Positions 9,612-64,000 of a DNA stretch of 64,000 nt are shown piece after piece. Under the pieces are notes generated by a model. The model saw nothing but the letters and a program-made list of their open reading frames with translations, was not told where the DNA came from and searched no databases. This stretch comes from Phyllobates terribilis (Eukaryota), in contig NW_027362763.1 in NCBI RefSeq assembly GCF_046119375.1, positions 767,250,001 through 767,314,000 of the forward strand, given 5' to 3'. Position 1 is the first letter of the stretch. Every line of letters starts with the position of its first letter. The position numbers were made by a program, and so were the translations under genes.

Positions 9612-10034
9612 AAGAAAAAAATTCTGACATCCTCTGTTGCATGCCGTATTATGGAGATATCCTCCTGCAGAAGCATTGCTCCTCTTTGTGAATATGTTCG
9701 ATATAGGTGTGACATTGGGGCCACGAGAACCTTCTTGAGCCGTACAGTATCTATTCTAACTACTGTCAAATAACAATGATAAAAATCAATTTGTATGGAG
9801 CACCAAATAGTTTCTAAAAGTCACATAACTTGTCCCGCAAACAACAAAGGTCTTAAACGGCTAATGTAAATGTGGAAACAAAAAAAGTTATGGCTGATAA
9901 AATGTTGTTAGGCAGAAATAATTTTGTGGTCCTAAAGATCAAAACTTACTCATTCCTTAACTTTGTACAACTGGCACTGGTCATCAGTGACAAATATTAG
10001 ACTTATACTAAGATTACGAGGCATCTACATTTAG

Positions 10035-10510
10035 GTCCAGAAATATTTGACCAGTGACTGAATCTTGGTGGTTTGGGCTCCGAATGCCTAGATTATGGAT
10101 TTAAAATGAAACAACTGAAAAGCAATTGTAGTGTAGACCTTCAGGTTTAATTCAAGGGGTTAAACATAAATATCCTGTGAAACATTTAGGAATTACAACC
10201 ATTTTTCTACAAAGCCTCCTCATTTCAGGGGCTCAAAAATATTTGGACAAATTAACTTTACCATAAATAAAATGCTAATTGTTAATACTTTGCAGAGAAT
10301 CCTTTGCAGGTCATGACTGCCTGAAGTCTAGAATCCATGGACATCACCAAACGCTGGGTTTCCTCCTTTACTGCAGCCGATCTCAGTTGTTTCTTATTTG
10401 TGGGTCTTTCTGCCTTAAGTTTTGTCTTAAGCATGTGAAATGTATGCTCAATGGGAGTGAGATCTGGTGGTGACTCCGCCATTGCTGAATTTTCCACTTC
10501 TTTGCCTAAA
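10035..10510 (-). mobile_element. Truncated Tc1 fragment
   Basis: Minus-strand peptide SPPDLTPIEH...LKTKLKAERPTNKKQL...RLQAV is a degenerate Tc1 transposase C-terminus. Confidence 0.6.
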
Positions 10511-11708
10511 AGGAATCAGTTTTTGAGCCTATGAACAAATGCCACCACTTTAACTGCTCCTTTTATTATTAACATTTTCCTGCCTGTTTTTAAACAATAT
10601 TTTACCTCACAAAATGAATCCTGTGCGATCACCTGCTGTAATGTCTGTATACTCTTTTGCTTCCTCCCCTGCCCAGGAGATGTGGTATGCTCCGTACACG
10701 GTCAGACACAGACAATTTTTAAAATGAACTTTTGTTTGTGGGAAAACCCCTTTAAATTCACCAAAAGAGGCAGCAAAAACACATGGTTGCTTCCTAAGCT
10801 GCAGTTTTCCAATTCAGTCGGGAAAAAAAAAAAAAAAAGCATTGGTGTGCAGGAGATTTCTGAAATTCATATCTTTTGCTGGTACTATAAAAAGCAGCTT
10901 TTAATTTTCAAAAAAAATGCCGCAAAAAAAAGCAACGTGTGAACATACCCCATCTGTCAGGGAGGCAGAGCGCTGTCAGTCTGCATACAGAAAATACACT
11001 ATGAGAACCAATTCAGAAACGGCAGTACTATATTGAACCTGGAATAAAATGCATGAAACCACGTCTTGTCGTAAGTCGGAGCCAGTGACCCATAGAATTG
11101 TAAATGTTGATGTTGACTATCAGACTTGCACGGTGAATTAGAGGGTGAACGCTTGAGGTGACGCGTCTCCCCTGATCCTGGTAACACTATATACAACTAC
11201 TAAATACAATTTGTCTCGGATTTACTTGCCAAATGTTTTCTACTTTTCACCACTTTTTAACAACTGACTGACATTATTTTATTAGCTACAAACGGGCTAC
11301 TTGAGACAACAGGAGCCTGAGCACAACCTTCCATAAAAAAAGAGACCCCGCATTACAAGTCAGCAACTGAAACAAGAAACTGCCCTGGGAACTTTATGAT
11401 AATAGATACACAAGCCGTCATTATCGTAAAAAAAAAAATCACAAAAACGGCACAGGGTATAGGCACGCAAGCAAGCTTCAGGAAGTAAAACCCAACGGCT
11501 TTCAGTAAGCCAGGGGATATTGGGATCAATACAATTTCCATGAAAAGTTCATGTTCTCAATGGCTAATCAAACTTTTTTAAAAGTTTTGATATTTTATAG
11601 CCAGTATTTAGTAAGGGGACTCAGAGTTCTGATACCCCTACCGGTAGCTGAAAGAAGGAGCGCTCAATTTATCCTCAATAAACAGAGCCGTGTACTCACT
11701 TTTCCTCT

Positions 11709-46500: not shown

Positions 46501-48564
46501 TGGGGCCCATTGTTCTGTATGGAGGACTATGTGGGGCCCATTGTTCTGTATGGAGGACTATGTGGGATCCATTGTTCTGTATGGAGGACTATGTGGGGCC
46601 CATTGTTCCGTATGGAGGACTATGTGGGGCCCATTGTTCTGTATGGAGGACTAAGTGGGGCCCATTGTTCCGTATGGAGGACTATGTGGGGCCCATTGTT
46701 CAATATGGAGGACTAAGTGGGGCCCATTGTTCTGTATTGAGGACTATGTGGGGCCCATTGTTCTGTATTGAGGACTATAGTGCGCCATTTATACTGTATG
46801 GAGGACTATGTGGGGCCCATTGTTCCGTATGGAGGACTATGTGGGGCCCATTGTTCTATATGGAGGACTAAGTGGGGCCCATTGTTCTGTATTGAGGACT
46901 ATGTGGGGCCCATTGTTCTGTATTGAGGACTATAGTGCGCCATTTATACTGGTTGGCCAGCGACTTTGTCCAAGTTTTTCATTTTGGCCCTGTGTGTGTT
47001 TGAGTTTGACATCCCTGCTCTAAACGCAGGTTTTTCCACAAGTAAAATCTGCCATATGAACGTACCCTAAGGGGTCACATATAGATGGTCCTCAATAACT
47101 GGAATCAGCTGCGCTCCTGGATTCAACTCATCACTTTGATTGCGCTGATGCAAATAAGAAAAAGCAACAGAGCTGGAGGGGATGTCAGCCATGCAAACTG
47201 CTAGGTCAGTGTGAGGCACCGAGCCCTGGAAGAAGCTTGCAGAACGTCTGTGTGATTTTACACAAGTGATGCAAGCTGTCATTGGTTTTCACAGTTTAGA
47301 AGATATAGGCGGCATCACTATGCGAAAGGTCTCTTTATTCACCCTTGCACTGTTTCAGTTCAACTACGGAGCCTTTCTCCTGTAGACAGAGCAGGACATT
47401 TGCCAAGGCAAAAATTAGATGGCAGCCACACGGCTTTATAACATTATTAACCTGCAGGTTTACCCTATCTCTGTAGGTTAATAGTGTTTTTTACATGACA
47501 GATTCCCTTTAAATGCATGTATGTGGGGCTAAAAAAAATCATGTTTTTAATTCAATTTCATAAAAATTTTGCACCATTTTGCCCAGCTAAAAAGAGCTGA
47601 AAAAAAAGACTGGTAGAAGCGTTAGAAACTCTCTCATCAAACCTTTAGAATGAGCTCACACAGGGATTCTCAATTCACCCATTGTGCTTCTAGCAATAGA
47701 CAGCATTAGCGCTCGTCCAGATGACCGTAATAATCGGACGAGTGCCATTAGTCGTTTTATTATGTTATTCTATGGGGCCGAGCACATTTACAATTTTGTC
47801 CTCTGACCGAGTCTGGAGAAGAAAAAAAATCACACCATGCACAAGTTTGATCCAGTATTCAGATCGCAATCGGCCATGCAAGGCAATGACTGTGTGGAAA
47901 ACATCAGACTGCACTCAGATGACATCTGAGTGCAATCAGATTTCCATGGACTGACAGAATGGAGATGGAGACATTTTTTTCTCCATCTTCTCTTCTTCCG
48001 AATGAATTGGATCACACTATGATGACACTCTGATCAGTGTGAATTGCATAATTGACCCGATTTTCTCGTCTGCACCTAGCTTAACACAAGGGCTACAGAA
48101 GGCAAATGGTGCAAAATTATAAATATACCCAATTATACAAATGATTGTTAGCAAATAATACATGCAGTTAAGAAAGAAAAAATGTTCCAAAAGGTGGACA
48201 ACCCCTTTAAGGATGTTTGTTTACCAAGTGCAACTTGTATCTTCCATTTACTGCAATAGGACTTCAGATTTGGTTTGGCTAAGGGAAAATCTATTCAGAA
48301 TGTATTCACATAGGACATATCTGCTTTGGAAACCAGAATGGAAAACCATGCGGTTGTATGAACAGTGAAATAGGTTTTACATTGAAACCAATGGGTTGTG
48401 TTTTGTAGACATTTTTCACACCATTTTTAACATGGAAAATGTTCTTTCCACATGAAAACTGATAAAAATACCCCAAAACGTAACCGTACCACTAGTGTCT
48501 GCGCCAGCATGGCATTTCATGTGCTTCCCGGTCATTAGCAGAACCATTAGAGCGCACGTCCCAG

Positions 48565-51342
48565 ACACATACACCTGTACACCACACATACAACTATATA
48601 CCACACACTTACACCTATATACCACACACGTACACCTATATACTACACACTTGTATCTCATGTACACCTATACACCACACGTACACCTGTATGCCACATG
48701 TACACCACACACGTACACCTATATACCACACGTACACACCACACACGCACACCTCATGTACACCTATACACCACACACGTACACCTATATACCACACACG
48801 TACACCTCATGTACACCTATACACCACACACGCACACCTCATGTACACCTATACACCACACACGTACACCTATATACCACACACGTACACCTCATGTACA
48901 CCTATACACCACACACGCACACCTCATGTACACCTATACACCACACACGTACACCTCATGTACACCTACACACCACACACGCACACCTATATACCACACA
49001 CGTACACCTCATGTACACCTACACACCACACACGCACACCTCATGTACACCTATACACCACACACGCACACCTATATACCACACGTACACCTCATGTACA
49101 CCTACACACCACACACGCACACCTCACGTACACCTATATACCACACACACACACCTCATGTACACCTATACACCACACACGCACACCTATATACCACACA
49201 CGTACACCTCATGTACACCTACACACCACACACGCACACCTCATGTACACCTATACACCACACACGTACACCTATATACCACACACGCACACCTCATGTA
49301 CACCTATACACCACACACGTACACCTATATACCACACACGTACACCTCATGTACACCTATACACCACACACGTACACCTCATGTACACCTATACACCACA
49401 CACGTACACCTATATACCACACACGTACACCTCATGTACACCTATACACCACACACGCACACCTCATGTACACCTATACACCACACACGTACACCTATAT
49501 ACCACACACGTACACCTCATGTACACCTATACACCACACACGCACACCTCATGTACACCTATACACCACACACGTACACCTATATACCACACACGTACAC
49601 CTCATGTACACCTATACACCACACACCTCATGTACACCTATACACCACACACGTACACCTATATACCACACACGTACACCTCATGTACACCTATACACCA
49701 CACACGCACACCTCATGTACACCTATACACCACACACGTACACCTATATACCACACACGTACACCTCATGTACACCTATACACCACACACGCACACCTCA
49801 TGTACACCTATACACCACACACGTACACCTCATGTACACCTACACACCACACGCACACCTCATGTACACCTATACACCACACACGTACACCTATATACCA
49901 CACACGTACACCTCATGTACACCTATACACCACACACGTACACCTATATACCACACACGTACACCTCATGTACACCTATACACCACACACCTCATGTACA
50001 CCTATACACCACACACGCACACCTATATACCACACACGTACACCTCATGTACACCTACACACCACACACGCACACCTCATGTACACCTATACACCACACA
50101 CGCACACCTATATACCACACACGTACACCTCATGTACACCTACACACCACACACGCACACCTCATGTACACCTATACACCACACACGCACACCTATATAC
50201 CACACGTACACCTCATGTACACCTACACACCACACACGCACACCTCATGTACAACTATACACCACACACGTACACCTATATACCACACACGCACACCTCA
50301 TGTACACCTATACACCACACACGCACACCTATATACCACACACGTACACCTCATGTACACCTACACACCACACACGCACACCTCATGTACACCTATACAC
50401 CACACACGTACACCTATATACCACACATGCACACCTCATGTACACCTATACACCACACACGTACACCTATATACCACACACGTACACCTCATGTACACCT
50501 ATACACCACACACGTACACCTCATGTACACCTATACACCACACACGTACACCTATATACCACACACGTACACCTCATGTACACCTATACACCACACACGC
50601 ACACCTCATGTACACCTATACACCACACACGTACACCTATATACCACACACGTACACCTCATGTACACCTATACACCACACACGCACACCTCATGTACAC
50701 CTATACACCACACACGTACACCTATATACCACACACGTACACCTCATGTACACCTATACACCACACACCTCATGTACACCTATACACCACACACGTACAC
50801 CTATATACCACACACGTACACCTCATGTACACCTACACACCACACACGCACACCTCATGTACACCTATACACCACACGTACACCTATATACCACACACGT
50901 ACACCTCATGTACACCTACACACGCACACCTCATGTACACCTATACACCACACACGTACACCAATATACCACACACGTACACCTCATGTACACCTATACA
51001 CCACACACGTACACCTATACACCACACACGCACACCTCATGTACACCTATACACCACACGTACACCTATATACCACACACGTACACCTCATGTACACCTA
51101 CACACCACACACGCACACCTCATGTACACCTATACACCACACACGCACACCTCATGTACACCTATACACCACACACGTACACCTCATGTACACCTACACA
51201 CCACACACGTACACCTATATACCACACACGTACACCTCATGTACACTTATACACCACACACGCACACCTCATGTACACCTATACACCACACGTACACCTG
51301 TACACCACACATGTATACCACATGTACACCTATATACCACAC
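48565..51342. repeat. 2.8-kb CA/TA-rich compound minisatellite
   Basis: Shuffled modules ACACCTCATGT, ACACCTATAC/ACACCTATAT and ACCACACACG(T/C). Confidence 0.95.
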
Positions 51343-51640: not shown

Positions 51641-51960
51641 ATGTAGCGGTTACAATAACAACCAATGGGAGCTCACGTATCATAGAATCTTACGAAACAC
51701 AAGTGAGAGTCGCGCTCCTATTGGTGGAAGGATGGCAGCGCGATTACAGGCAGAGAAGGTGACCTGAGCGCAGAGTTGTCGCCTCCTCGGTATTTCCGGT
51801 GCTGAAGCTCCTGCACCACAGCCGGCTGTAGTGTACGGTACAGGTGAGGCTGAGCTGCGGGGAGTGGGGACATTACATATTACACTCGGTGGGCACCTGT
51901 AGCCTTCATACACACCTGCAGCCGAGCGCTGATATAATGGTTGTCAGTGGCACGTGGTGT
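51540..51960. promoter_or_regulatory. CpG-containing, probably bidirectional MKKS promoter
   Basis: Local CpG/GC enrichment, CCAAT at 51662 and ATTGG at 51720, YY1-like motifs on both strands, ETS-like TTCCGG at about 51794, and a splice donor at 51844. Confidence 0.65.
51720..51843 (+). other. MKKS: Probable MKKS exon 1 (5' leader)
   Basis: Strong donor CAG|GTGAGG at 51843/51844 within the CpG patch, upstream of the uORF exons. The transcription start is approximate. Confidence 0.6.
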
Positions 51961-52261
51961 GGAGAGTTGTAGCCTAGCACTCACTGCAGTGTCACTGTGG
52001 CTGTCCAGACTCCAGGTGCTAATGCTTTGAAAAAATGGCAACAATGAAGCCCTACAGCTGGCGACACAAGGCAGGAGAGGGATTCCATAAATGTGCAGGT
52101 GCTGAGACTGGTTGCTACAGGCAACGGCTCTAGTTTGTCATGAATCTTGATACATATTTACAACAAAAAAGACACCGACCCAACATTTCTCCAGCAGTTA
52201 TCCGTCGCTAGACTATGTATGACCCACTATGCCATCGAAGCTGCCAAGAGAAAAGCGGCCA

Positions 52262-52299
<38 letters not shown>

Positions 52300-52759
52300 G
52301 TTTATTTAGTATCTGCAGTTATGACCTGTAACTGTAAAGAAGCCTTTCCTATAGAGATGCTGGAATCGCTTTACAATATATGGCATTGTGCTCCAATAAT
52401 AATTGTTATTTTTTTAGCGCCAACATATTCCACAGCACTTTACAATTTTAGGAGGGACTTGTACAGACAATAAAGACTTTACAGAATAAACATAACTCAG
52501 ATACCAGGAGGAGAGAGGGCCCTGATCACAAGCTACAGTCCAGGGCCGGCTCCAGGTTTTTGTGGGCCCCGGGCGAAAGAGTCTCAGTTGGCCCCTTTGA
52601 CACATACCACAATTCATGATGCACAGATACCGCAGAGAAATATATATATATATAGTACAAGGACAAAGATTTCACTTCTTACATTACATGAGTGATATCT
52701 ATTGTAAATTCTACAATAGCTCAGAAATCGGCAAATCGCTCCACACATTATACTTGTCC

Positions 52760-54458
52760 CCATATAACGCTCCATACAGGATACTGGCCCCCCACATAAT
52801 GCCTCATGCAGGCTGTTCCCCCCCACATAATGCCCCATGCAGGATGTTACATCCCCTTACATATAATGCCCCATGCAGGATGTTACACCCCCCTCCCTTA
52901 TAATGGCCCATGCAGGATGTTACACCCCCTCCCTTATAATGGCCCATGCAGGATGTTACACCCCCTCCCTTATAATGCCCCATACAGGATGTAACACAAC
53001 CCCCTCCATTATAATGCCCCATGCAGGATGACACACACACACACCCCCCTCCATTATAATGCCCCATGCAGGATGTCACACCCCCCCCCTCCATTATAAT
53101 GCCCCATGCCGGATGTCACCCCCCCTTCTAATGCCCCATGCAGGATGTCACACACCCCCCTCCCTTATAATGCCCCATGCAGGATGTCACACACCCCCCT
53201 CCCTTATAATGCCCCATGCAGGATGTCACACACCCCCTCCCTTATAATGCCCCATGCAGGATGTCACACACCCCCTCCCTTATAATGCCCCATGCAGGAT
53301 GTCACACCCCCCCCTCCCTTATAATGCCCCATGCAGGATGTCACACCCCCCCCTCCCTTATAATGCCCCATGCAGGATGTCACACCCCCCCCCCCTTATA
53401 ATGCCCCATGCAGGATGTCACACCCCCCCCTCACTTATAATGCCCCATGCTGGATGTCACACACCCCCTCCCTTATAGTGCCCCATGCAGGATGTTACAC
53501 CCCCTCCCTTATAATGCCCCATACAGGATGTCACACCCCCTACCCCCTTATAATGCCCCATGCAGGATGTCACACACCCCCTCCCTTATAGTGCCCCATG
53601 CAGGATGTTACACCCCCTCCCTTATAATGCCCCATACAGGATGTCACACCCCCTACCCCCTTATAATGCCCCATGCAGGATGTCACACACCCCACTCCAT
53701 TATAATGCTCCATGCAGGATGTCACACAACCCCCTCCATTATAATGCCCCATGCAGGATGACACACACACACACCCCCCTCCATTATAATGCCCCATGCA
53801 GGATGTCACACCCCCCCCCTCCATTATAATGCCCCATGCCGGATGTCACCCCCCCTTCTAATGCCCCATGCAGGATGTCACACACCCCCCTCCCTTATAA
53901 TGCCCCATGCAGGATGTCACACACCCCCCTCCCTTATAATGCCCCATGCAGGATGTCACACCCCCCCTCCCTTATAATGCCCCATGCAGGATGTCACACC
54001 CCCCCTCCCTTATAATGCCCCATGCAGGATGTCACACCCCCCCTCCCTTATAATGCCCCATGCAGGATGTCACACCCCCCCTCCCTTATAATGCCCCATG
54101 CAGGATGTCACACACCCCCTCACTTATAATGCCCCATGCAGGATGTCACACACCCCCTCACTTATAATGCCCCATGCTGAATGTCACACACCCCCTCCTT
54201 TATAATGACCCATGCAGGATGTCACACCACCCCCTCCCTTATAATGCCCCATGCAGGATGTCACCCCCCCTCCCTTATAATGCCCCATGCAGGATGTCAC
54301 ACACCCCCCTCCCTTATAATGCCCCATGCAGGATGTCACACCCCCCCCCCTTATAATGCCCCATGCAGGATGTCACACCCCCCCCCTCACTTATAATGCC
54401 CCATGCTGGATGTCACACACCCCCTCCCTTATAGTGCCCCATGCAGGATGTCACACAC
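52760..54458. repeat. About 39-bp C-run minisatellite in MKKS intron 1
   Basis: Unit CCCCCTCCCTTATAATGCCCCATGCAGGATGTCACACA. Preceded by a hAT-like end CAGGGCCGGCTCC at 52541. Internal 730-bp duplication (53041/53771). Confidence 0.93.
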
Positions 54459-55128
54459 CTGTTATTGCAGCTGGGGGACAGGTTTTCCAAAAATGGAAAA
54501 CCCATATAAGGAACGTAGACTCTAAATTCTTTTATATATTTCAAATAACAACCAGAGCAGGTACCTTCCTGCCGCTGCTTGGGTCTCAATGCTTTGGCTG
54601 CAATGGTGACATCATGTTGACAGTGCACGTTACTGCTACTGCCAATCACTGAGCTTAGTAGCTAACACAAGTAATAGCAGCTCAATCTCCACGAGGGAAG
54701 AGAAAACAGGCTATTATGTGCTGAATAGAAGTTGTACTGATAAGAGCAATGAATACAGCTGCATCCTAGATGCACACATACCTTACGTTCAGCCTGTATA
54801 ACTGGGAGGGTCAATCCCAGAAGACACAGTTCTGCATCTTAGATCAGGCCGCAATCAGCATTTCAGGAGTTTTGAAAGTGAATAATGGAATGAAGATTGC
54901 TGACTGAAACTTTGTACAATATGTAACTAACATATCAAAAGCATGTTTTTCATGTCTGAGGTTTCCATAGCCTTTTAGCGGACTGCATTTGACATATCTG
55001 TGTGTATTCTTGGTCCCGCTCGTACTCGAACATGCGTCTTTCTCCAGGCCCTGCTGTGTTATTTCCGATTTGTAGCATTATTTTTCTTATATATATATAT
55101 TTTGTTTTTGTGTAGATTGATCCAAGTG

Positions 55129-55314
55129 ATGGGACTAAAATCAATATGGAAGAGCTACAAAGTTTTGATTGTTATGGGAACAAGTCTTGGAGTAATACAC
55201 TGGGGCTGGATTAACATGCAGTCAAACCCAATATTTCATCCTGAGGGTCAAGGTCGATTACCATCCATTTTTCGGTTTCTTTCAAGTAAAGAAACGGATC
55301 CAAAAGACAAATAA
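55129..55314 (+). CDS. uMKKS1-like upstream microprotein, 61 aa, single predicted TM helix
   Basis: MGLKSIWKSYKVLIVMGTSLGVIHWGWINMQSNPIFHPEG... resembles recalled human uMKKS1 (MSLRNLWRDYKVLVVMVPLVGLIHLGWYRIKSSPVF). It lies in exon 55116-55336 (TGTAG| and |GTAGGT) with strong Kozak GTGATGG. Confidence 0.85.
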   Translation: MGLKSIWKSYKVLIVMGTSLGVIHWGWINMQSNPIFHPEGQGRLPSIFRFLSSKETDPKDK

Positions 55315-55451
55315 TGGTGTGATTGTGGTCCTTTAGGTAGGTGTCTATTCCATCCATCTGTATTCCCAGCTATACCATGCTACAGACCTCCAAAACTAAA
55401 CCTCAGGACTTTCATTTGCACATCTTCTATGTTTAAAATTAACAAATCTGT

Positions 55452-55457
55452 AATAAA
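55452..55457 (+). terminator. Candidate intronic poly(A) signal after the uMKKS1 exon
   Basis: AATAAA about 115 nt past the exon 2 donor. Confidence 0.3.
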
Positions 55458-57773
55458 GTCGCATGTGCATAGCCATATTACAGTCCAGTATGGACAGTCT
55501 TGGAAAAGGCACCCATAGATATATTTGGGGTCTCACTGTACATGCACAAACATGTGAAGTTTTTTATTCTGTCAATTACATATGTTCAAATGGTGACATC
55601 AGTCTTATGTAAGATACTATTCTCATATTTAAGCATTAGTACTAGGGGAAAATAGCTCCAAACATACGGCAGCACATGGGGAAGCTTCCTCCATACAACT
55701 CTTCCTTGTGCATGAGGCATCAAGTCCATCTGTTAAATTATAAAAAAAAAATGTTTAGTATGATTTGTTTATTGAAATCCTATTGACAACTTATCTGGCT
55801 GCCAGATCAACTTAAGGGTTGTTCCCTCACTTTCACTTACTCCTTAAATATGTTCTCCAGTAATGTAATAAAACTGTCCCTGTCACTTAACTCGAACGGC
55901 GTCACGTGTCAGGACAGGCTGCAGTCTGAAGAAACACAGCTCCCGAGATCTGTGTCTCAACTGACAGAGGAGCTGTATTGTAAACGCATGTTCCTCCGTG
56001 AGCCCAGGAGAAGAAATGAATCTATTCCTCGGCCAACTGCGCATGGAGGACTGAGGCTGGAAAAAAATTACTTTTGTGATCAGTTAGCCGAAGAGAAGAA
56101 TTACTTCTTCTCCTGTCACAGACCTTCTCGAGTAGCTCCAGTATGTGAGCTTATGATACGGCTCCTCTGTCAGTTGAGGCACAGGTCTCAAGAACTGTTT
56201 TTCTTCAGACTACAACCTGTTCTGACATGACTACGATGGGCTGCCGTATGAATTACATGATGGGGATAATGTTGTTCAATTCTTGGAGAAGCCATCCAAA
56301 GGGGTATGTTGGCCATCTTTTTTTTTTGTGTAAATGCAAATGCATGATCTGTGGGAAAATAAGAAAATCAGTCTTAAATAACCCATGATGCTCTAGTGCT
56401 ACTCCCTGTCCTTGTTGATGTGCACACTGCATCATGTAAACTACAAGTGTACTGAGCCCAGGCATTGGCTGCAGTGTTCACATGCCATAGACATAACCTC
56501 TCGGCTGCAGCGATGACAGTGGGCAGCAGTGGAGAGGCAGGGCTGGAGCAGCACGGCGTAATTAAGGCTGATTATTGAATTTTACACACAACAAAATCCT
56601 TAAACCCCTTTAAGATTTTTCAGAGGGTTTCTCTTAACTGGATATATTTCTTATTAGGCCTTATAGACATCATTGGAGCCCCCTGTATTCACCATAGTGC
56701 ATGTTATGTTAGGATGGGAACATTCTGTGCTTATGGCTATCGGTGGACGCGTATAGTCAGAGGTTATGTGCCCAACAATGGCCAAAGTCAGGATGAATGA
56801 CTGATCTATCTATGTATAATACATACATAATATTTTAAGCCTTTTTTGGGTGCTTTGCTGTAAAGGAATATATAGTCCAGCAAAAGGCACATGCCTGCCA
56901 AACGGAGCCCAAAAGTACGGTTGGCTTCCTCCTAGTGAATGGGAATGCTCCTGATATATCCGAGACAAAGCGCAATTACCCTTAGGGTGGAGTCAGACAG
57001 GACAGCCATATAAATCAGACCGCTGTCGCCGCTCTCCCGACCCGAGCATGACATCTTCATAGAAATCTATGCAGCGGTCATGCTCGGGTCTGGAGACCTG
57101 CCGCCCAGTCCATGCACTGCGGTTTGATCTTGGTCATACTTATACGGCCGTCTGACTGCGCCCCTACTCTGCGTTTCCTATCTAGTGGCTATAATGTATA
57201 GCTGCCTATATCTTATCCTAGTCATACCAGCCGATGGCTCGGGGGTTTTGCAGCTTTTCTGCAGAGTGCCCCATAGTACAGAAGGGGTTGTCCAGCTCTC
57301 AGCCTTATAATTGTTGGTTCACGAGTACTTCACTAATTTTGTAAAAGACCCCAGTAGTTCCTGACATGTACATCTATAAAATGTATGGCATATCATTGAA
57401 TATTCCATCACTTTGATTGTTATGGATACAACCTCTGGGACTTGCACTGATCCCGAAAATGAATCTGTCACTGTGTTATTTCAGTGCTGCAGCCCCCTTA
57501 ACAGTTTCCTCTGCCATTCTAGTGAATAGTCAGAAAATCAGAGTGAAGAGTCAGCGTTGCAGCTTTTTATACTTTTAGAATCATTGGGGTCCCAGAGATC
57601 AGATCCCCATCATGGTTTATCCTAATTATCATTTTACAGATTGCTTTAAACAAAATTCACAATAGTTTTTGTATTGGAGAATGAATGTTGAATTAAACGT
57701 AATTGTGATTTTTTTTTTTTTTCTTTTAGATTTTTTTTAAATCTGCTCTTCTTGACCTGGAAGCAAAGGTGAA

Positions 57774-57926
57774 ATGAAGCAGAAATCATTTTTGCGGAAG
57801 AATTGGTTCTGGGTCGCGGGGATATCTTTTCTAGGCATTCACTTTGGGACGTATTTTATTCAAAGAGTTGCAAAGAGTTCTGCTAGAGAAACTGTGGCCA
57901 TCAGAGATACTAAAAGCAGCGACTGA
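57774..57926 (+). CDS. uMKKS2-like upstream microprotein, 50 aa, single predicted TM helix (too short for the ORF track)
   Basis: Hand translation MKQKSFLRKNWFWVAGISFLGIHFGTYFIQRVAKSSARETVAIRDTKSSD resembles recalled human uMKKS2 (MKNTSWIRKNWLLVAGISFIGVHLGTYFLQRSAK...). Acceptor (T)nAG at 57728-57729. Confidence 0.87.
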   Translation: MKQKSFLRKNWFWVAGISFLGIHFGTYFIQRVAKSSARETVAIRDTKSSD

Positions 57927-58050
57927 ACAGACTGCCTCTTATACAGCCGTGCCACTGGATAAGTCACAATTCCCCAATGTTCATGCTCTCAGTACTTGCC
58001 AGCGTACATCTGTAATGTCACACATTTCCCCCCCATGTTGGTGTAAGATT

Positions 58051-58056
58051 AATAAA
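58051..58056 (+). terminator. Poly(A) signal between uMKKS2 and the MKKS start codon
   Basis: AATAAA followed by T-rich sequence. Short uORF-only MKKS transcripts are, as I recall, reported in mammals. Confidence 0.55.
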
Positions 58057-58116
58057 TTATATGATTTTTAAATCCTAAACTGATTTAGTTTTCTTGAGGA
58101 ATAGGAATTTGACATA

Positions 58117-59107
58117 ATGGAAAGAGTTGAACAGAAAAAGCAGTCGTTGTGTAGTGCCGGCCCCGTAACCAGTGCATCGCTCAGGCAGGCACTGAGTGTG
58201 ATACAGATGATGGTGACCTCATGCTATGGCCCGTATGGACGACTGAAGCAAATTCATAATGATAGTGGGGGGTATGTTACCACGACATCACAATCCTCTG
58301 CCTTGCTCGGTGGGATTTCGGTCACTCATCCTGCACTACAGTTACTAGTCGCCTCCATCCGTAATCATATCGCTGCCTTCAGTGATTGTGGACTCTTTGC
58401 AGCAATTCTTTGCTGCAACTTGATTGACAGGTGCCTGAGATTACCGGTCTCTACCCACAAGGTGATTAAATTACACGAGAGTCTTATGGACATGTGTTTT
58501 ACTTACCTGAAGTCAGAGGACTGTGCTTGCAGAGTCAATGTGGATTTTAGCCACAGCAAATCGCTGCTTGCCCTAACCCGTTCCGTTCTTTGTAGCAAGC
58601 CAGCCTGCATGATGACCATAAAAGAAGTAGATTATGTCAGTCTACTGATTGTAAAAGCTTTTCTCTACAAAGTGCCCAATGTGACCAGTCCCAATCACCT
58701 GTTAGGAAGAACCCTGATCGTGGCTGTAGAAGGAGCAAGCGTTATGGACTCTGCCTTCGTCCCTGGCGTGCTCATTGAAGCGCCAGCCCGCAGTTGGAGC
58801 AGAACGAGACCTTCTTCCAGACCGCCCCCAACCACCATTAAGTTGGCCTTGTTTTCGGGGTCGTTATGTGGAGAATTCAGTGATACAGGAGATGGCACAG
58901 TGGAAGTTATGGCTGGTGTAGATCCAGAAAAAGTAATGTTGGACCAGTTGATTGATTTAGGGAGACAGCTAGTGAATGATCATGTGCAAATACTTTTGTG
59001 TCAAAAAGTGATCCACCCGTCACTGAAGCAGTATTTGAAGGAGCACGATGTCTTTTCCTTGGACAGATTAGGAGCAGCCTTGATGAAACCATTAAGTGAA
59101 ATGACAG
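58117..59107 (+). CDS. MKKS: MKKS/BBS6 chaperonin-like protein, coding exon 1
   Basis: VTSCYGPYGRLKQIH...TTTSQSSALL...FSDCGLFAAILCC matches MKKS. Donor CAG|GTAATA, phase 1. Confidence 0.97.
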
Positions 59108-59644
59108 GTAATAACATAGTGATGTACTTATACAGTATAAAATGAGCTCCTTGTACTACTAGCTATGAAGGATTTCTGACCATGCCAGACTTTATTGTTT
59201 TTGAGAGGTCAATGATTGCACTAATTATTCAATTTTTCAAAACTGGATATACACTTACAAAAATAGAGGGTTTTTTTTGGGGGGGGAGGGATTGCATTAA
59301 ATTAGTTGTGCAAGATTGGAAAAACTTGGCTAAAAGCAGTGGCACTTATAGCCACAGATCTGTGTCTGACTTCATGGGCAATTGCTCCACACAGCCAGGC
59401 AAACCTGCAGGTCAACTACTTTTTCTGGAAGAAAACTGCTGTTTAAGGCTTCGTTCACACATTGATTTTTTTATTATTCTTTTCTCCTTTTAATGTTTGG
59501 CTTAAAAATAGCCATGTATTTTTAGTTGTTTTTGCATTTTTCATTATGGCCATCTTTCAAGTCCAGTAGCAAACCCTTTAATAAAAATGCTTGCAGAAAT
59601 GCCATATAAACAGTGGAGGGAGGAGAATTTGTTATTTATGTTTT

Positions 59645-60120
59645 TAAAGGAAACCTGTCGGGAGATCCGGCTGGGCTGCTCAAGCTGCAGGAAACCTAAA
59701 TCCGACACTGACTTGTAAAAGCGGATGGGGACAACGTGTCTAGGCTGACTAGTCCTAGATGCAGTTCCCAGTCGACTCCTTGCCAACCCGCTTCCCTTGA
59801 TTGACTGGTCTTTCACTTCACACCCAAGGAGAGGCTGGCCATTGGAGGAGAATGGGGTTGGGAGAAGCCACCAGGGTCCTGCCTCTTTGGCTCCAATGGT
59901 GTATAGGAAAAAGACCGATCAAACGGTCGAAACATCGATTTATGGATTCTGTTTTGTCCTGCCTTGCCGTATAAGGGTTTATTATCATTTAATAAAACAT
60001 CTATAATCACATCTATTGGAGTGCCGAAGTTCTATTTATACCTTACATGCAATAATGTAGCCAGTGCCTGATTCTTCTGTCTGTCGTTCGGGCAGAATGA
60101 ATCTGCTGTCAGATTCACCT
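59645..60120. mobile_element. MITE in MKKS intron
   Basis: AAAGGAAACCTGTC...GTCAGATTCACCTGTTTAA termini, related to the other TTAA-type MITEs. Confidence 0.45.
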
Positions 60121-60769
60121 GTTTAATCCCTTGTATACCTCTGTATTGTCGTAGCAATAATAGAGGTACTAACGTAGAAAACAGTCCTAACTACCACAAC
60201 AACCCCTAAGCACCCTGCAGTCATGGAAGGAAGGGGGTGAGAGCGCGATGGTGTGACACAGAGCCTTTCTTTTTGTCTAACTGTTTAGATGCTGTGGTCT
60301 TAATTGACCACGCCATCTATGGGGTTAAAACCTTACAGACTGGTGTTGACTTTATACCAAATCCAGCAGCCCCACATATGGACCATGCTAATGTGATTAG
60401 TTAACATAGGATTGCCTAGACAGCATGCAAATATATCCTTCTTCCAGTTGCTCTAATAATTCGGTCTAGTTTTCATTCTTTTAATTGAAAGGTAGTGGCT
60501 CTCCTTGCAGAAGTTCAACTTATATTTGGAGTTTTGCAGGCAATGCTTAATCTGGGGAAAAAAATATGCACATTAGCTCTCCTGCAGAGAGCAACCTCCC
60601 CAGTACCACCTACGGATAGCTACCCTTTATGACAATAAAACTTAACTAGGGGTATCTCTGGAGTGGAGCTAAATCATTTACAGTCCTCTAAATGAATACT
60701 TTACATGGCACAATGTTGTGTACAATTCTGTGCTTTAGACCATTGCCTTTTTTTCTCCTTTTCTCACAG

Positions 60770-60945
60770 GTGCACAGCCTGTCGCTTCTCTCTGCCCGGT
60801 GTCCTCTGCTTGTTATGGCCACCTCCAGCAGATCAGTGAAGTGTCCTATGGGAATAAGCAGTACCTGCATCTTCTCCCTGATTCCACTGCTGTGTGCAGT
60901 ATTGTGCTCTGCAACCGGAATGAGACCTCCCTAAAAGAGCTCACG
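60770..60945 (+). CDS. MKKS: MKKS coding exon 2 (176 nt)
   Basis: Acceptor CACAG| and donor ACG|GTAAAT. Encodes GAQPVASL...VCSIVLCNRNETSLKELT and keeps frame. Confidence 0.95.
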
Positions 60946-61635
60946 GTAAATTAGTTACAAAGGGAACTACATGAGAACATATTAATCTGATCAGTGTTGT
61001 ACATATAAGGAAGAGTAATCGGGTCGCCCCCTTTACACATCAGGCCATTGTACCTGGGCAGATAACAAAGGGGCCACTTCACTCCAAAAAGATTCTTGAT
61101 CAGTGGACTCCTCCATTACCCCTAAAATGTCCTAAGATCGTGTAATTTCTTACCCTTTAAGCTGGGGATTCGTACTGGAATTTTTCTGCTTTTAGATGGG
61201 GTGTCGAGGGAATAAAAATTCTTTGTAAAGGGCTCAGAGTGATGTTAAAAAACAAACAAACAGTAAGTAATACCCTAACCTATTCTCTGTAACTCTTGTT
61301 CTGATCGTTTACCCAGTCATGCCAGTCCTTACTACCTGGTCCTGTATCAGCACAACAGAAATGCCTACTGTGAGCCAATCATCACAGTGGAGATCCTCCT
61401 CACCCCTGTGATTGGCTGATCGGCATTTCTGGAGTGTTGAGATTGGACCAGGAATAGAGACGAGAGGGTCCGGGTAAATTGCAGGTGATCAGCAAGGTTA
61501 TTGCACCTCTTATTTTTTTTCTTTATCTCTCATTTTTATCATCAGGACGACCCTATTAATTGACGTGCTGTTTGCCTTTTGTAGTGAGGAACAGTTTCTC
61601 AGTTTCATCATTTTTCGCTCATCTTCCCTTTCCAG

Positions 61636-61746
61636 CGAACGTGTCAGACAGCTGAGCACACTTTAAATCTTCTTCTTAAGGATCCCTGGCTCCTGCTCGG
61701 TGGGGGATGCACTGAAGCGCACGTGGCTGCTTATATCCGTTATAAG
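61636..61746 (+). CDS. MKKS: MKKS coding exon 3 (111 nt)
   Basis: Acceptor TCCAG| and donor AAG|GTACAT. Encodes [37 protein letters not shown]. Confidence 0.95.
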
Positions 61747-62465
61747 GTACATGGTCATAAACAGAAGAAAAACAGCTTATTATAATTTGGCATATTATTG
61801 TAATACGGAGTTGTAATTTAGTAGTTAAAGGGATTGTTTAGCTTTAGTCTAAATCTCTTTCATGTACCCTATTAGGGAATAATGGGTAAACAAAAAGAAG
61901 TCCTCTGTTCAGGATCCTGATCTCTTAGGTGGGAGAGTGGCTACAAACAGCGTCTATCGGGCTGAGGTCACATATATCCGTTGAGTTCAGTTATTATGTG
62001 CCAGAGCTGGCACCACTGAGGACATTTTGGTGCACACAACTGATGCCCCCCAGCTGCAAAACTGATTCTATAGGAAATTTCAGATTGCGGCTTTTTTTTT
62101 TTTTTTTTTTTTATTAAACTGGAGGAAATTATGACAGGAGTGCAGGACTTGTATAAAGGAGGTCTCACTATGGAGAATCTGTCCTTTCTTGTATTACTGT
62201 GTGATACTTAAATGGGTTTTTTCGGTCTTCTGATGCTGTCAGGAGTCTCTGGTATTGCTGGCGAGAGCGAGCTATCTGATTTGCATACCAACTAGAAGTG
62301 CCCAGCCTTACGTACTTCACTTGTAATGAGCGAGACAAAGCACGTCTAGTTGGAAGGTGCCTGCAAATTACTTGAAGTCACGTGGCCACCCACTCTCACC
62401 GGCAATATTGACAACCACGCTATAATTGATTCAGACTTTTATCAGAAGACCTAACAACCCCTTTA

Positions 62466-63203
62466 AAAAGGAATCTGTCGTCCCAAAATGCAAATTAAAC
62501 CGTTATATAGGGAACTAAGCCTAGATAAAAAACACTCATATTAAAAGTATATATATCATTGCTCTAATTACTTTAAAAACTTGTTTTATTCCATATACAA
62601 ATGAGGGGACTTCGGTGCACCCTTGGCGTGGCCAACAGCTCAATGGACCGTTCGGCTTCCCTCAATTTGCCTGCTGAGCAGTTCCCTTGACTCTGACCTC
62701 TGCCTGATCCCTAACCGCGACCCTGACAGCAGCCACACCTTCAGTATACTCATACACCCAGAAGGGTAACAAGCGGCCTCAGATAGGACGGAGAGGATCT
62801 GTTATGTGTTCCTCCTATGTTCAGTGCATCACAGAATAGGTCAGTGTCAGCGCTGAGATTAACCTATTCTGTGATGCACTAACATAAGAGCTGTATGTGA
62901 CTGATCCTCTCCGCCCTTTCTTCATCTCTAAAGCCGCTTGTTACATTTATAGGCAATGAAGAAGCGTGCGCTGTCAGAGGTAGGGGAACTGCTCAGTATG
63001 GCAATTGAGGGGGTCATAATGGTGCACCAAGCTCTTGGCCACACCAAAGGTGCACCGAAGCCCCCTCATTTGTATACGGAATAAATTGAATTTTATAAGC
63101 AATTACAGCAATGAAATATGTACTGCTTATATTATTTTTATAGGGACTAAATCCCCTATATAACTGTTTAATTTGCATTTCAGAGGTGTTAGACTCCCTT
63201 TAT
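62466..63203. mobile_element. Palindromic MITE in the last MKKS intron
   Basis: AAGGAATCTGTC...AGACTCCCTT termini and mirrored inner blocks around a central hairpin at about 62810-62890. Confidence 0.6.
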
Positions 63204-63359
63204 TTTCCCCTGTGGTGGCGCTGCAGGGGAAATGATCCCTTACTGCCAGGTTTCTGCACAGATCACAGTTGATTGCTGGGGGTCCTATCTTTTGGGATTC
63301 TCCCAGACCTGGTTATTATCATGTATTTGAGGTAAATGTAGTATGTGTTATATTTTCAG

Positions 63360-63800
63360 ATTTCCCGTATTCCCAGCAGGCATCTTGAAGAGCTGAGGTG
63401 TACAGCGTCTGAGTACAAGCTGGCGGCTGACTGCTTCTGCTCCGCATTCGAGGCCGCTGCTCGAAGTCTGGAGCATGATGGCGGAGACATCATTACAGAT
63501 TTACAGGACGGACACGTCTGGTCTATACCTCCTGAGGCCAGTAATGGTGAATACGCAGAAGCTGTGCATATGTGTGGCTGTCGGCTTCTCCACAAGAGAG
63601 AGGATCTACAGTGGTCTGTGCTTGGAAGCCCATGTCTGCCATTCAGCCCCCGAACTCGCACAGAAGTCTCCCCAGTCTTACTAGCCAAAGACACTCTGAT
63701 TTTAGATAGCTTCACTGCAAAGTGTAATGGTATAAGGGTGGCTGTGGACACGACGGGGCTCATCTTGGATCTGGCATACGTTGTTAGAGATACAAATTAA
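63360..63800 (+). CDS. MKKS: MKKS last coding exon; total CDS 1719 nt, 572 aa
   Basis: Acceptor TTTTCAG|. Encodes FCSAFEAAARSLEHDGGDIITD...CGC...LDSFTAKCNG...LILDLAYVVRDTN*. ATTAAA at 63809-63814. Confidence 0.96.
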   Translation: MSRIPSRHLEELRCTASEYKLAADCFCSAFEAAARSLEHDGGDIITDLQDGHVWSIPPEASNGEYAEAVHMCGCRLLHKREDLQWSVLGSPCLPFSPRTRTEVSPVLLAKDTLILDSFTAKCNGIRVAVDTTGLILDLAYVVRDTN

Positions 63801-64000
63801 TATAAAAAATTAAAACTTTTTTCATCCTGTAAGAATTATTACTTTTCTGAGTACAAATCCATGATTGAAACAATGAATCCACATGTATCTGGTCAAAAAG
63901 ATCTACAGCTCCTTAACCCCTTCATGACCGGAGCTTTTTGCTTTTTCGTTTTTTGCTCCCCTTTTCCCAGAGCCATAACTTTTTTATTTTTCGGTCAATA

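What the first reader, a model, noticed from the sequence alone, without database searches (positions are those of the whole stretch)
51720..63814. MKKS locus is effectively tricistronic: two membrane microproteins precede the BBS chaperonin
Seen: exon 2 encodes a complete 61-aa ORF, and exon 3 encodes a complete 50-aa ORF followed 190 nt later by the MKKS ATG. Both have sound splice sites, and a purine at -3 of the start codon. Established (recalled): mammalian MKKS mRNA has uORFs encoding mitochondrial proteins that repress MKKS translation. Inference: this arrangement is conserved from amphibians to mammals despite heavy repeat invasion of the introns, implying selection on co-expression of mitochondrial microproteins with a cilia chaperonin. 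Automated annotation would likely call these exons UTR.
Basis: partly seen in the sequence, partly recalled or inferred. Interest (0 to 1): 0.85.

Follow-up and report, generated by a model that had tools for sequence, protein, structure and literature searches.

The report
Known microprotein ORFs upstream of MKKS
The frog MKKS messenger RNA does carry two conserved small membrane-protein genes ahead of the cilia chaperonin, but this is the already described vertebrate uMKKS1/uMKKS2 arrangement and is already annotated as coding in other frog genomes.

Summary
A 61-codon ORF (55129-55314) lies wholly in exon 2. A 50-codon ORF (57774-57926) lies in exon 3, 190 nt before the MKKS ATG (58117). 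Assembled RNA contigs from four public runs join exon 1, exon 2, exon 3 and downstream MKKS exons, with no depth over unique intron sequence.

The ORFs are orthologues of human uMKKS1 (Q9HB66, LOC128706665) and uMKKS2 (LOC128706666). Both evolve under purifying selection: omega is 0.25 and 0.15 across nine vertebrates, against 0.21 for MKKS. The order (61-63 aa, then 50 aa, then chaperonin 179-240 nt later) recurs in a teleost, an alligator, a macaque and five further frog genomes.

This is known biology (Akimoto 2013; a 2026 human knockout study).

Three extras came up:
- A conserved AATAAA block sits 61 nt before the MKKS ATG. It fits the human short microprotein-only transcripts but was not tested here.
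- An eel locus keeps both microprotein ORFs but has no MKKS.
- Cuttlefish transcripts carry a uMKKS1-like ORF, a second 50-codon ORF and an MKKS-like chaperonin, so the layout may predate vertebrates.

Verdict: a real feature that is already known. Interest is low to moderate.

The parts
51774..51843 (+). Non-coding exon 1 of the MKKS mRNA. This is the minimal extent; the true 5' end was not determined. The donor is ACAG|gtgagg.
   Evidence: Loose 5' letters of the RNA contigs (up to 70 nt) are identical to window 51812-51841 plus AG. No ATG occurs in this stretch.
52827..54459 (.). 38/39-bp minisatellite of about 43 copies inside intron 1.
   Evidence: Tandem Repeats Finder. It produces the many spurious repeat ORFs seen.
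55116..55336 (+). Exon 2 (221 nt). It holds the whole of uORF-A.
   Evidence: RNA contig pieces 55114-55336 in runs X1, X2, X3 and X15, with 0 mismatches. Splice sites were read.
55129..55314 (+). uORF-A, the uMKKS1 orthologue. It has 61 codons and is the first AUG of the supported mRNA. A predicted single long helix spans residues 11-32.
   Evidence: human Q9HB66, E 8e-14; omega 0.48 in frogs (p = 0.003) and 0.25 in nine vertebrates (p = 1e-17). Searches give hydropathy and the AF2 model.
57730..59107 (+). Exon 3. It holds uORF-B, a 190-nt spacer and the first 330 codons of MKKS.
   Evidence: RNA contig pieces 57739-59109 lie 9 contig letters after the exon 2 piece; the 9 letters match 57730-57738, a T-run the tool skipped. 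The acceptor and donor were read.
57774..57926 (+). uORF-B, the uMKKS2 orthologue. It has 50 codons. A predicted helix spans residues 11-48, with a hydrophobic core at 11-29.
   Evidence: macaque, E 8e-17; omega 0.26 in frogs (p = 1e-6) and 0.15 in nine vertebrates (p = 6e-25); residues 1-37 are nearly invariant across gnathostomes. One search gives the AF2 model.
57927..58116 (+). Spacer between uORF-B and MKKS. It contains five more AUGs heading ORFs of 3-18 codons.
   Evidence: The spacer length is 179-240 nt in all eight species that have MKKS.
58036..58106 (+). Conserved non-coding block with AATAAA (58051-58056) followed by U-rich sequence. It is a candidate alternative polyadenylation site that would give a microprotein-only mRNA.
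   Evidence: The block is 79-86% identical among five frogs, against 23-57% in the 5' part of the spacer. AATAAA occurs in the spacer of all five frogs, alligator and macaque, and after uORF-B in the eel. Use of the site was not shown here; the human precedent is cited in PMC11837024.
58117..59107 (+). Start of the MKKS (BBS6) coding sequence, a group II chaperonin-like protein.
   Evidence: By tblastn it is 54% identical to the macaque, 53% to the alligator and 74-78% to the frog Cpn60_TCP1 genes that lie downstream of the same two small ORFs. Omega is 0.23.
60770..60951 (+). MKKS exon 4 (the 3' boundary is approximate).
   Evidence: The RNA contig continues from 59107 into letters found at 60770/60772. 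tblastx against Leptodactylus MKKS supports it.
61633..61755 (+). MKKS exon 5 (boundaries approximate).
   Evidence: tblastx against Leptodactylus MKKS, 93% over 41 aa.
63342..63800 (+). Last MKKS coding exon, ending in the stop codon (the 5' boundary is approximate).
   Evidence: The ORF 63345-63800 matches the C-terminal part of MKKS in Paramormyrops, alligator and Leptodactylus.

Best explanation
This is the dendrobatid-frog orthologue of the vertebrate MKKS/BBS6 locus, with its known polycistronic leader.

Shown here:
- One spliced mRNA carries, in order, uMKKS1 (61 aa, exon 2), uMKKS2 (50 aa, exon 3) and MKKS.
- Both small ORFs are conserved at the protein level from teleosts to primates; uMKKS1 is also present in cyclostomes.
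- Conservation is concentrated in an N-terminal hydrophobic helix.

Inferred from sequence and from the human orthologues:
- Scanning ribosomes meet the uMKKS1 AUG first, in a strong context (G at -3, G at +4), and translate it.
- A fraction of ribosomes reinitiate 66 nt later at uMKKS2.
- Few reach the MKKS AUG, which is the 12th AUG and lies behind five further mini-ORFs. MKKS would therefore be translated at a low level.
- A conserved AATAAA/U-rich block 61 nt before the MKKS AUG probably allows cleavage and polyadenylation there. That would give a short bicistronic mRNA making the microproteins without MKKS, as described in human.
- The two products are single-pass membrane microproteins. 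In human they fractionate with mitochondrial membranes, and uMKKS1 supports oxidative phosphorylation.
For: Anatomy.

One assembled mRNA: (four runs; contigs of 2.5-2.6 kb spanning exon 1, exon 2, exon 3 and downstream exons; no depth over unique intron sequence).

Orthology:
- uMKKS1 against human Q9HB66/LOC128706665, E 8e-14.
- An exhaustive profile search found 40 representatives, including primates, marsupials, turtles, teleosts, lamprey and hagfish.
- uMKKS2 against macaque, E 8e-17, with hits in frogs, axolotl, crocodilians, turtles and a teleost named 'LOC128706666 homolog'.

Synteny: small ORF, then 50-aa ORF, then a Cpn60_TCP1 protein of 568-573 aa in Paramormyrops, Alligator, Macaca, D. 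tinctorius, Anomaloglossus, Rhinoderma, Leptodactylus and Engystomops, and in Dendropsophus once its unannotated uORF-A is added.

Selection: omega 0.25 (uMKKS1) and 0.15 (uMKKS2) across nine vertebrates. Likelihood-ratio tests against omega = 1 give p = 1e-17 and 6e-25. MKKS has omega 0.21.

Where the constraint lies: N-terminal residues 1-36/37 are 65-69% identical, the C-terminal tails 30-31%.

Helices: AF2 pLDDT 83-90 over residues 11-30; Kyte-Doolittle hydropathy 1.3-1.4 over 19 residues.

Polyadenylation block.

Human function: PMC11837024 (uMKKS1 and uMKKS2 are translated, found in mitochondrial membrane fractions and repress MKKS; alternative polyadenylation signals lie in the 5' UTR). 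PMC13577902 (the 63-aa product is the dominant MKKS-locus protein, is found at the outer mitochondrial membrane, and its knockout lowers respiration). PMC7530721 (repression depends on the peptide sequence).
Against: - Contigs assembled from short reads do not prove that single molecules carry all three ORFs, and they hide minor isoforms.
- No ribosome profiling or proteomics exists here for the frog, so translation is inferred from omega below 1.
- Hydropathy of both helices is only moderate (below the classic 1.6 threshold).
- Membrane and mitochondrial location is transferred from human.
- Use of the AATAAA site in frog RNA was not tested; the single read-laying run used contigs, which carry no end information.
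- Omega of uORF-A within frogs is only 0.48, and its dS (0.15-0.64) is lower than that of MKKS (0.52-0.89). Some of its conservation may therefore be at the RNA level.
Confidence: 0.88

Rival explanations
1. The two ORFs are purely cis-acting translational repressors of MKKS. They are conserved because the nascent peptides stall ribosomes or because the RNA is constrained, and the released peptides have no function of their own.
For: Human reporter work found that repression by the MKKS uORF depends on the peptide sequence (PMC7530721). dS of uORF-A among frogs is lower than in MKKS, which hints at some nucleotide-level constraint.
Against: - Conservation is concentrated in the N-terminal hydrophobic helix, not the C-terminal residues that lie in the exit tunnel at termination.
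- The family keeps a membrane-helix signature across vertebrates.
- An eel locus keeps both ORFs (omega 0.12 and 0.18 against Paramormyrops) with no MKKS to regulate.
- The human uMKKS1 protein is abundant, mitochondrial and needed for respiration (PMC13577902).
Confidence: 0.08
2. The microprotein ORFs and MKKS are effectively separate genes. The small ORFs would be expressed only from short transcripts that end at the AATAAA before the MKKS ATG. MKKS would be made from other transcripts, and the apparent tricistronic contig would be an assembly chimera.
For: A conserved AATAAA/U-rich block lies 61 nt before the MKKS ATG. Human isoforms exist that lack the main ORF, and the outputs are decoupled. 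The eel locus ends without MKKS. The tool itself warns that a contig across two genes shows no single transcript.
Against: - Exon 3 is one continuous exon from uORF-B through the MKKS start, so any MKKS mRNA that uses the mapped acceptor at 57730 must contain uORF-B.
- Four independent assemblies give the same unbranched contig from exon 1 to the MKKS 3' part.
- No alternative first exon or promoter for MKKS was seen between 57927 and 58116.
- NCBI gene models in eight other species place the MKKS start 179-240 nt after the 50-aa ORF.
Confidence: 0.07
3. The ORFs are chance open frames in a long 5' UTR.
For: Open frames of 50-60 codons are common in this AT-rich, repeat-rich region.
Against: The ORFs are orthologous, length-conserved and under purifying selection in nine vertebrates, with p = 1e-17 and 6e-25 against neutrality.
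Confidence: 0.01

Closest known systems
Human uMKKS1 (63 aa, UniProt Q9HB66, NCBI LOC128706665, 'micro-MKKS63') and uMKKS2 (50 aa, V9GZ13, LOC128706666) in the MKKS 5' leader (Akimoto et al. 2013, as reviewed in PMC11837024; PMC13577902)
   Same: - Same order and exon placement: uMKKS1 in its own exon, and uMKKS2 in the exon that also holds the MKKS start.
- Same or nearly the same lengths (61 against 63 aa; 50 against 50 aa).
- Same conserved helix motifs: YKVLIVMxxxLGxIHxGW in uMKKS1 and RKNWLxVAGxSFxGxHxGTYxxQ in uMKKS2.
- AATAAA between uMKKS2 and the MKKS ATG.
- A similar spacer (190 nt in the frog, 220 nt in macaque).
   Different: - The supported frog exon 1 has no uMKKS0-type AUG.
- The frog uMKKS1 C-terminal tail (GRLPSIFRFLSSKETD) differs from the EYIPEPGIV / DIPEEDS tail of fishes, alligator and primates.
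- Nothing about translation, location or function has been measured in frogs.
NCBI RefSeq models 'uncharacterized LOC128706665 homolog' and 'LOC128706666 homolog' in other frogs (for example Pseudophryne corroboree, Hyla sarda, Pelobates fuscus, Dendrobates tinctorius)
   Same: The D. tinctorius 61-aa protein is 98% identical to uORF-A. The Anomaloglossus 50-aa protein is 86% identical to uORF-B. The gene order with MKKS is the same.
   Different: Annotation is patchy. uORF-A is not called in Dendropsophus ebraccatus and uORF-B is not called in the eel.
Other uORF-encoded mitochondrial microproteins on mRNAs of unrelated main proteins: the MIEF1 microprotein and the SLC35A4 uORF product
   Same: A conserved-peptide uORF gives a stable mitochondrial microprotein and also lowers translation of the main ORF (PMC7530721, PMC11837024).
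   Different: There is no sequence relationship. Those loci have one such uORF, whereas MKKS has two in tandem plus an internal polyadenylation option.

Membership tests
uMKKS1 / LOC128706665 family | Sequence similarity to human Q9HB66 | tested here: met
   BLASTP gives 39% identity over 46 aa, E 8e-14. The profile of frog sequences finds the primate cluster that holds Q9HB66 at E 1.9e-11 in a library of 1.84 billion proteins.
uMKKS1 / LOC128706665 family | Encoded upstream of MKKS on the same strand and on the MKKS mRNA | tested here: met
   RNA contigs join exon 2 to exon 3 and the MKKS coding exons. The same order is seen in eight other species.
uMKKS1 / LOC128706665 family | Protein-level purifying selection | tested here: met
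   Omega 0.48 in frogs (p = 0.003) and 0.25 in nine vertebrates (p = 1e-17).
uMKKS1 / LOC128706665 family | Translated, and located in the mitochondrial (outer) membrane | not testable with these tools
   Only indirect support: a predicted helix at residues 11-32 (pLDDT 83-89) and moderate hydropathy of 1.38. The location is known only for human (PMC13577902, PMC11837024).
uMKKS2 / LOC128706666 family | Sequence similarity to the mammalian 50-aa peptide | tested here: met
   67% identity over 33 aa to the macaque ORF at L004:17025-17174, E 8e-17. Residues 1-37 are nearly invariant in 22 gnathostome sequences. The human sequence itself was not retrieved; the link to it rests on NCBI's 'LOC128706666 homolog' names.
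uMKKS2 / LOC128706666 family | Lies in the same exon as the MKKS start codon, roughly 200 nt upstream | tested here: met
   190 nt in the window and 179-240 nt in the eight other species that have MKKS. Exon 3 is continuous in the RNA contigs.
uMKKS2 / LOC128706666 family | Protein-level purifying selection | tested here: met
   Omega 0.26 in frogs (p = 1e-6) and 0.15 in nine vertebrates (p = 6e-25).
MKKS/BBS6 (main ORF) | Group II chaperonin-like protein orthologous to mammalian MKKS | tested here: met
   The exon 3 part is 54% identical to macaque MKKS over 331 aa, E 3.5e-118. The syntenic genes carry Pfam Cpn60_TCP1. The remaining exons were located.
uORF-mediated repression of MKKS with alternative polyadenylation in the leader (Akimoto 2013 model) | The uORFs lower MKKS translation, and polyadenylation sites before the MKKS ATG are used | not testable with these tools
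   The sequence is compatible: the MKKS AUG is the 12th AUG, and a conserved AATAAA/U-rich block lies at 58036-58106. No 3'-end or translation data for the frog were available.

The most novel reading that the evidence does not exclude
The linkage of a uMKKS1-type microprotein ORF, a second 50-codon ORF and an MKKS-like chaperonin on one mRNA may predate vertebrates. Transcripts in Sepia esculenta RNA runs have exactly this layout. The microprotein pair may also be the independent, ancestral unit: an eel locus keeps both ORFs, with a polyadenylation signal after them, but no MKKS. The two microproteins may themselves be tandem paralogues (hhalign probability 90%). If so, MKKS would be a poorly translated passenger on an ancient mitochondrial microprotein gene rather than the reverse.
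Probability: 0.4. Interest if true: 0.6.

Novelty: already known. Interest (0 to 1): 0.3.

Why it matters
For this window it matters mainly for annotation. Exons 2 and 3 of MKKS are coding, and gene models for this frog should carry the two small CDS, as NCBI's models already do for related frogs. The biology (two mitochondrial microproteins ahead of the BBS6 chaperonin, repression of MKKS and short polyadenylated isoforms) has been published for human since 2013 and was extended in 2026, so the frog case adds an orthologue and no new principle.

The side observations could matter more if confirmed. A positionally conserved polyadenylation block would show that the microprotein-only isoform is an ancient regulated output. 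A cephalopod tricistron and an MKKS-less eel locus would bear on which gene is host and which is passenger. They also bear on the recurring statement that BBS6 is vertebrate-specific, and on how to read MKKS loss-of-function alleles and knockouts that also disturb the leader.

Tried and rejected
- Shallow profile comparison of the two peptides (A1 against A2) gave only 2.7% probability. With deeper alignments it rose to 90%, E 1.7e-6 over 23 ungapped columns. I treat paralogy as possible but not settled, because hydrophobic helices inflate such scores.
- The cuttlefish second ORF showed no similarity to the uMKKS2 profile, so it cannot be called uMKKS2.
dN/dS therefore used four more distant hyloid frogs.
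- The unnamed uMKKS1-like hit P0058 lies on a 5-kb genomic contig with no MKKS-like sequence, which is uninformative.
- A metagenome scan with the invertebrate-like alignment found three short contigs with 88-100-aa ORFs carrying a GFHYLWYRLQ motif. None had a chaperonin within 2-3 kb and none had a taxon.
- The ESUCA paper's table of the taxonomic range of the MKKS uORF is not held as text. I could not check whether conservation outside vertebrates has been reported.
- tblastn of frog and Paramormyrops MKKS against the eel locus found nothing above noise. I could not search the rest of the eel genome.
- The read-laying run returned assembler contigs, not raw reads, so it gave no information on 3' ends or isoform ratios.

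Full report
**What is in the sequence**

On the + strand, an ATG at 55129 opens a 61-codon frame that ends in TAA at 55312-55314. An ATG at 57774 opens a 50-codon frame that ends in TGA at 57924-57926. The long chaperonin frame starts at ATG 58117, exactly 190 nt after that stop. Start contexts are caagtgATGG, ggtgaaATGA and gacataATGG, so there is a purine at -3 in all three. The window contains no N.

**Transcript evidence**

Four public RNA runs of one organism hold 97-98% of the sampled words of exon 3. When laid on 54700-59400, each run gives one contig of 2.5-2.6 kb. Each contig covers 55114-55336 and 57739-59109 without mismatches. It is preceded by up to 70 letters identical to window 51812-51843 (exon 1) and followed by letters found at 60770 onward.

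The nine contig letters between the two pieces equal 57730-57738, a T-run the tool skipped. Depth over unique intron sequence is zero; the only intronic signal comes from short repeat-derived pieces. This gives the following exons, all with canonical AG/GT sites:
- exon 1 ends at 51843;
- exon 2 is 55116-55336;
- exon 3 is 57730-59107.

One caveat applies. Short-read contigs do not prove single molecules, and they hide minor isoforms.

**Identity of the small ORFs**

uORF-A:
- It finds 61-62-aa 'uncharacterized' NCBI proteins in frogs (98% identity in Dendrobates tinctorius) and an eel protein.
- An exhaustive profile search of 1.84 billion representatives gave 40 hits at E of 0.001 or better.
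- The cluster of one hit contains human Q9HB66, named 'Alternative protein MKKS' and 'uncharacterized LOC128706665'.
- Direct BLASTP of the frog ORF against that human protein gives 39% identity over 46 residues, E 8e-14.
- Other named members come from marsupials, turtles, salmonids, cyprinids, syngnathids, lampreys and a hagfish.

uORF-B:
- It finds 48-53-aa proteins in many frogs, axolotl, crocodilians, turtles and a teleost. Several are named 'LOC128706666 homolog'.
- It is 67% identical over 33 residues to the macaque ORF that lies between uMKKS1 and MKKS (E 8e-17).

**Synteny**

Gene tables around these proteins show a 61-63-aa ORF, then a 48-55-aa ORF, then a Cpn60_TCP1 protein of 568-573 aa. 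This holds in Paramormyrops, Alligator, Macaca, D. tinctorius, Anomaloglossus, Rhinoderma, Leptodactylus and Engystomops.

In Dendropsophus uORF-A is intact but not annotated. The gap from the uORF-B stop to the MKKS ATG is 179-240 nt in every species that has MKKS. uORF-B has 50 codons in eight of nine species.

**Selection**

| Region | Omega, five frogs | p against omega = 1 | Omega, nine vertebrates | p against omega = 1 |
|---|---|---|---|---|
| uORF-A | 0.48 | 3e-3 | 0.25 | 1e-17 |
| uORF-B | 0.26 | 1e-6 | 0.15 | 6e-25 |
| MKKS exon 3 part | 0.23 | 4e-52 | 0.21 | 3e-112 |

These values come from codon models (IQ-TREE, GY+F3X4). Pairwise NG86 values agree.

Conservation is concentrated in the N-terminal 36-37 residues (65-69% mean identity). 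The C-terminal tails are only 30-31% identical. That pattern fits a functional membrane helix better than a C-terminal stalling peptide.

AlphaFold2 predicts one long helix in each peptide: residues 11-32 in uORF-A (pLDDT 83-89) and residues 11-48 in uORF-B (pLDDT about 90 over residues 11-30). Kyte-Doolittle hydropathy over 19 residues is 1.38 and 1.34, which is only moderate.

**How it most likely works**

- In the spliced mRNA the uORF-A AUG is the first AUG, as far as exon 1 is supported. uORF-B starts 66 nt after the uORF-A stop.
- The MKKS AUG is the 12th AUG and lies behind five further mini-ORFs in the spacer. Under scanning and reinitiation, MKKS should be poorly translated.
- This matches the human literature. 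The uORFs repress MKKS (PMC11837024, PMC7530721). In human brain and cell lines the 63-aa product dominates while MKKS protein is barely detectable (PMC13577902).
- A canonical AATAAA lies in the spacer of all five frogs, alligator and macaque.
- Among frogs the block 58036-58106 (AATAAA plus U-rich sequence) is 79-86% identical, against 23-57% for the 5' part of the spacer. Synonymous divergence of MKKS between the same species is 0.5-0.9.
- I infer a conserved alternative polyadenylation site that yields a microprotein-only mRNA, as described for human. Use of the site in the frog was not tested.
- Membrane and mitochondrial location and a role in respiration are transferred from the human orthologues.

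**Comparison with what is known**

The arrangement is the published uMKKS1/uMKKS2 system. NCBI's pipeline already annotates both ORFs as separate protein-coding genes in many frogs.

The inference of selection for co-expression with a cilia chaperonin is not supported. The architecture and the human data point to repression or uncoupling of MKKS.

**Side observations that go beyond the literature I could read**

1. The eel locus. In Synaphobranchus kaupii (L003) both ORFs are intact. An AATAAA lies 121 nt after uORF-B. No MKKS-like sequence occurs in the 7.6 kb before the conserved Steroid_dh neighbour, or anywhere in the 20-kb locus. Omega against Paramormyrops is 0.12 and 0.18.

2. The cuttlefish transcripts.
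   - One unnamed profile hit (P0053, 58 aa, E 2.5e-6) lies on RNA contigs of about 3 kb (L010-L012).
   - It is followed by a second ORF of exactly 50 codons with a hydrophobic segment, and then by a 589/595-aa Cpn60_TCP1 protein.
   - That protein is 27% identical to frog MKKS (E 5e-39) but matches the CCT subunits and other group II chaperonins in the PDB at 53 bits or less.
   - Two of the runs are Sepia esculenta larval transcriptomes (PMC10571815).
   - The second ORF shows no similarity to uMKKS2. Orthology of the chaperonin to BBS6 rather than BBS10 or BBS12 was not tested. Contamination of the runs cannot be excluded.
   - Reviews disagree on whether BBS6 exists outside vertebrates.

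3. Possible paralogy. Deep profiles of the two microprotein families align over 23 ungapped columns with 90% probability, E 1.7e-6. Tandem paralogy is therefore possible, although shallow profiles did not show it.

**Verdict**

The feature is real, well supported and correctly read by the first stage, but it is already known and already annotated in sister genomes. Interest is low to moderate, and rests on the conserved polyadenylation block, the MKKS-less eel locus and the cuttlefish tricistron.

Noticed in passing
L003:10001-18470 (Synaphobranchus kaupii): The eel locus has intact uMKKS1 (10001-10210) and an unannotated uMKKS2 (10677-10829), with AATAAA 121 nt downstream. No MKKS-like sequence lies before the conserved Steroid_dh neighbour. 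MKKS may have been lost here while the microproteins were kept.
   Followed up: partly
L010:377-2548; L011:94-2416; L012:91-2413: RNA contigs from Sepia esculenta runs carry a 58-aa uMKKS1-like ORF, a second 50-codon ORF with a hydrophobic segment, and a 589/595-aa chaperonin. The chaperonin is 27% identical to frog MKKS. L011 and L012 have about 130-150 nt more than L010 between the second ORF and the chaperonin start, so these may be isoforms.
   Followed up: partly
window 55129-55314 and 57774-57926: Deep profiles of uMKKS1 and uMKKS2 match over 23 ungapped columns (KVLIVMGxSLxxIHxGWYxxQ against NWLWVAGxSFLGIHxGTYxIQ). hhalign gives 90% probability, E 1.7e-6. The two peptides may be tandem paralogues.
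   Followed up: partly
window 58036-58106: This is the most conserved non-coding block of the leader among five frogs (79-86% identity). It contains AATAAA at 58051-58056 and U-rich sequence, 61 nt before the MKKS ATG.
   Followed up: partly
window 55237-55311 (uORF-A codons 37-61): The frog uMKKS1 C-terminal tail (PEGxGRLPSIFRFLSxKETD) is conserved within frogs. It differs from the EYIPEPGIVxxV tail shared by fishes and alligator.
   Followed up: no
window 55129-55314: Synonymous divergence of uORF-A among frogs (dS 0.15-0.64) is lower than in MKKS exon 3 (0.52-0.89). This suggests an extra nucleotide-level constraint on exon 2.
   Followed up: no
window 55312-55322: The uORF-A stop overlaps a new start (TAATG), which opens a 2-codon ORF (M V stop).
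   Followed up: no
window 48561-51342: A 2.7-kb CA-rich minisatellite (53/85-bp units, about 32-49 copies) lies about 430 nt upstream of the supported start of exon 1. It produces spurious ORFs of up to 978 aa.
   Followed up: no
P0043 (Liparis tanakae, 125 aa); P0031, P0042: Some fish gene models fuse uMKKS1 and uMKKS2 into one 125-aa protein, or extend uMKKS1 into another frame of the uMKKS2 region. These are probably prediction artefacts.
   Followed up: no
L007:7347-7526 (Dendropsophus ebraccatus): An intact 59-aa uMKKS1 orthologue is present but is not annotated in that genome. The eel uMKKS2 is likewise not annotated.
   Followed up: yes
L013:1464-1781; L014:2030-2347; L015:329-625: Metagenome contigs of unknown organisms carry ORFs of about 88-100 aa with a GFHYLWYRLQ motif resembling the uMKKS1 helix. 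No chaperonin lies within 2-3 kb.
   Followed up: partly
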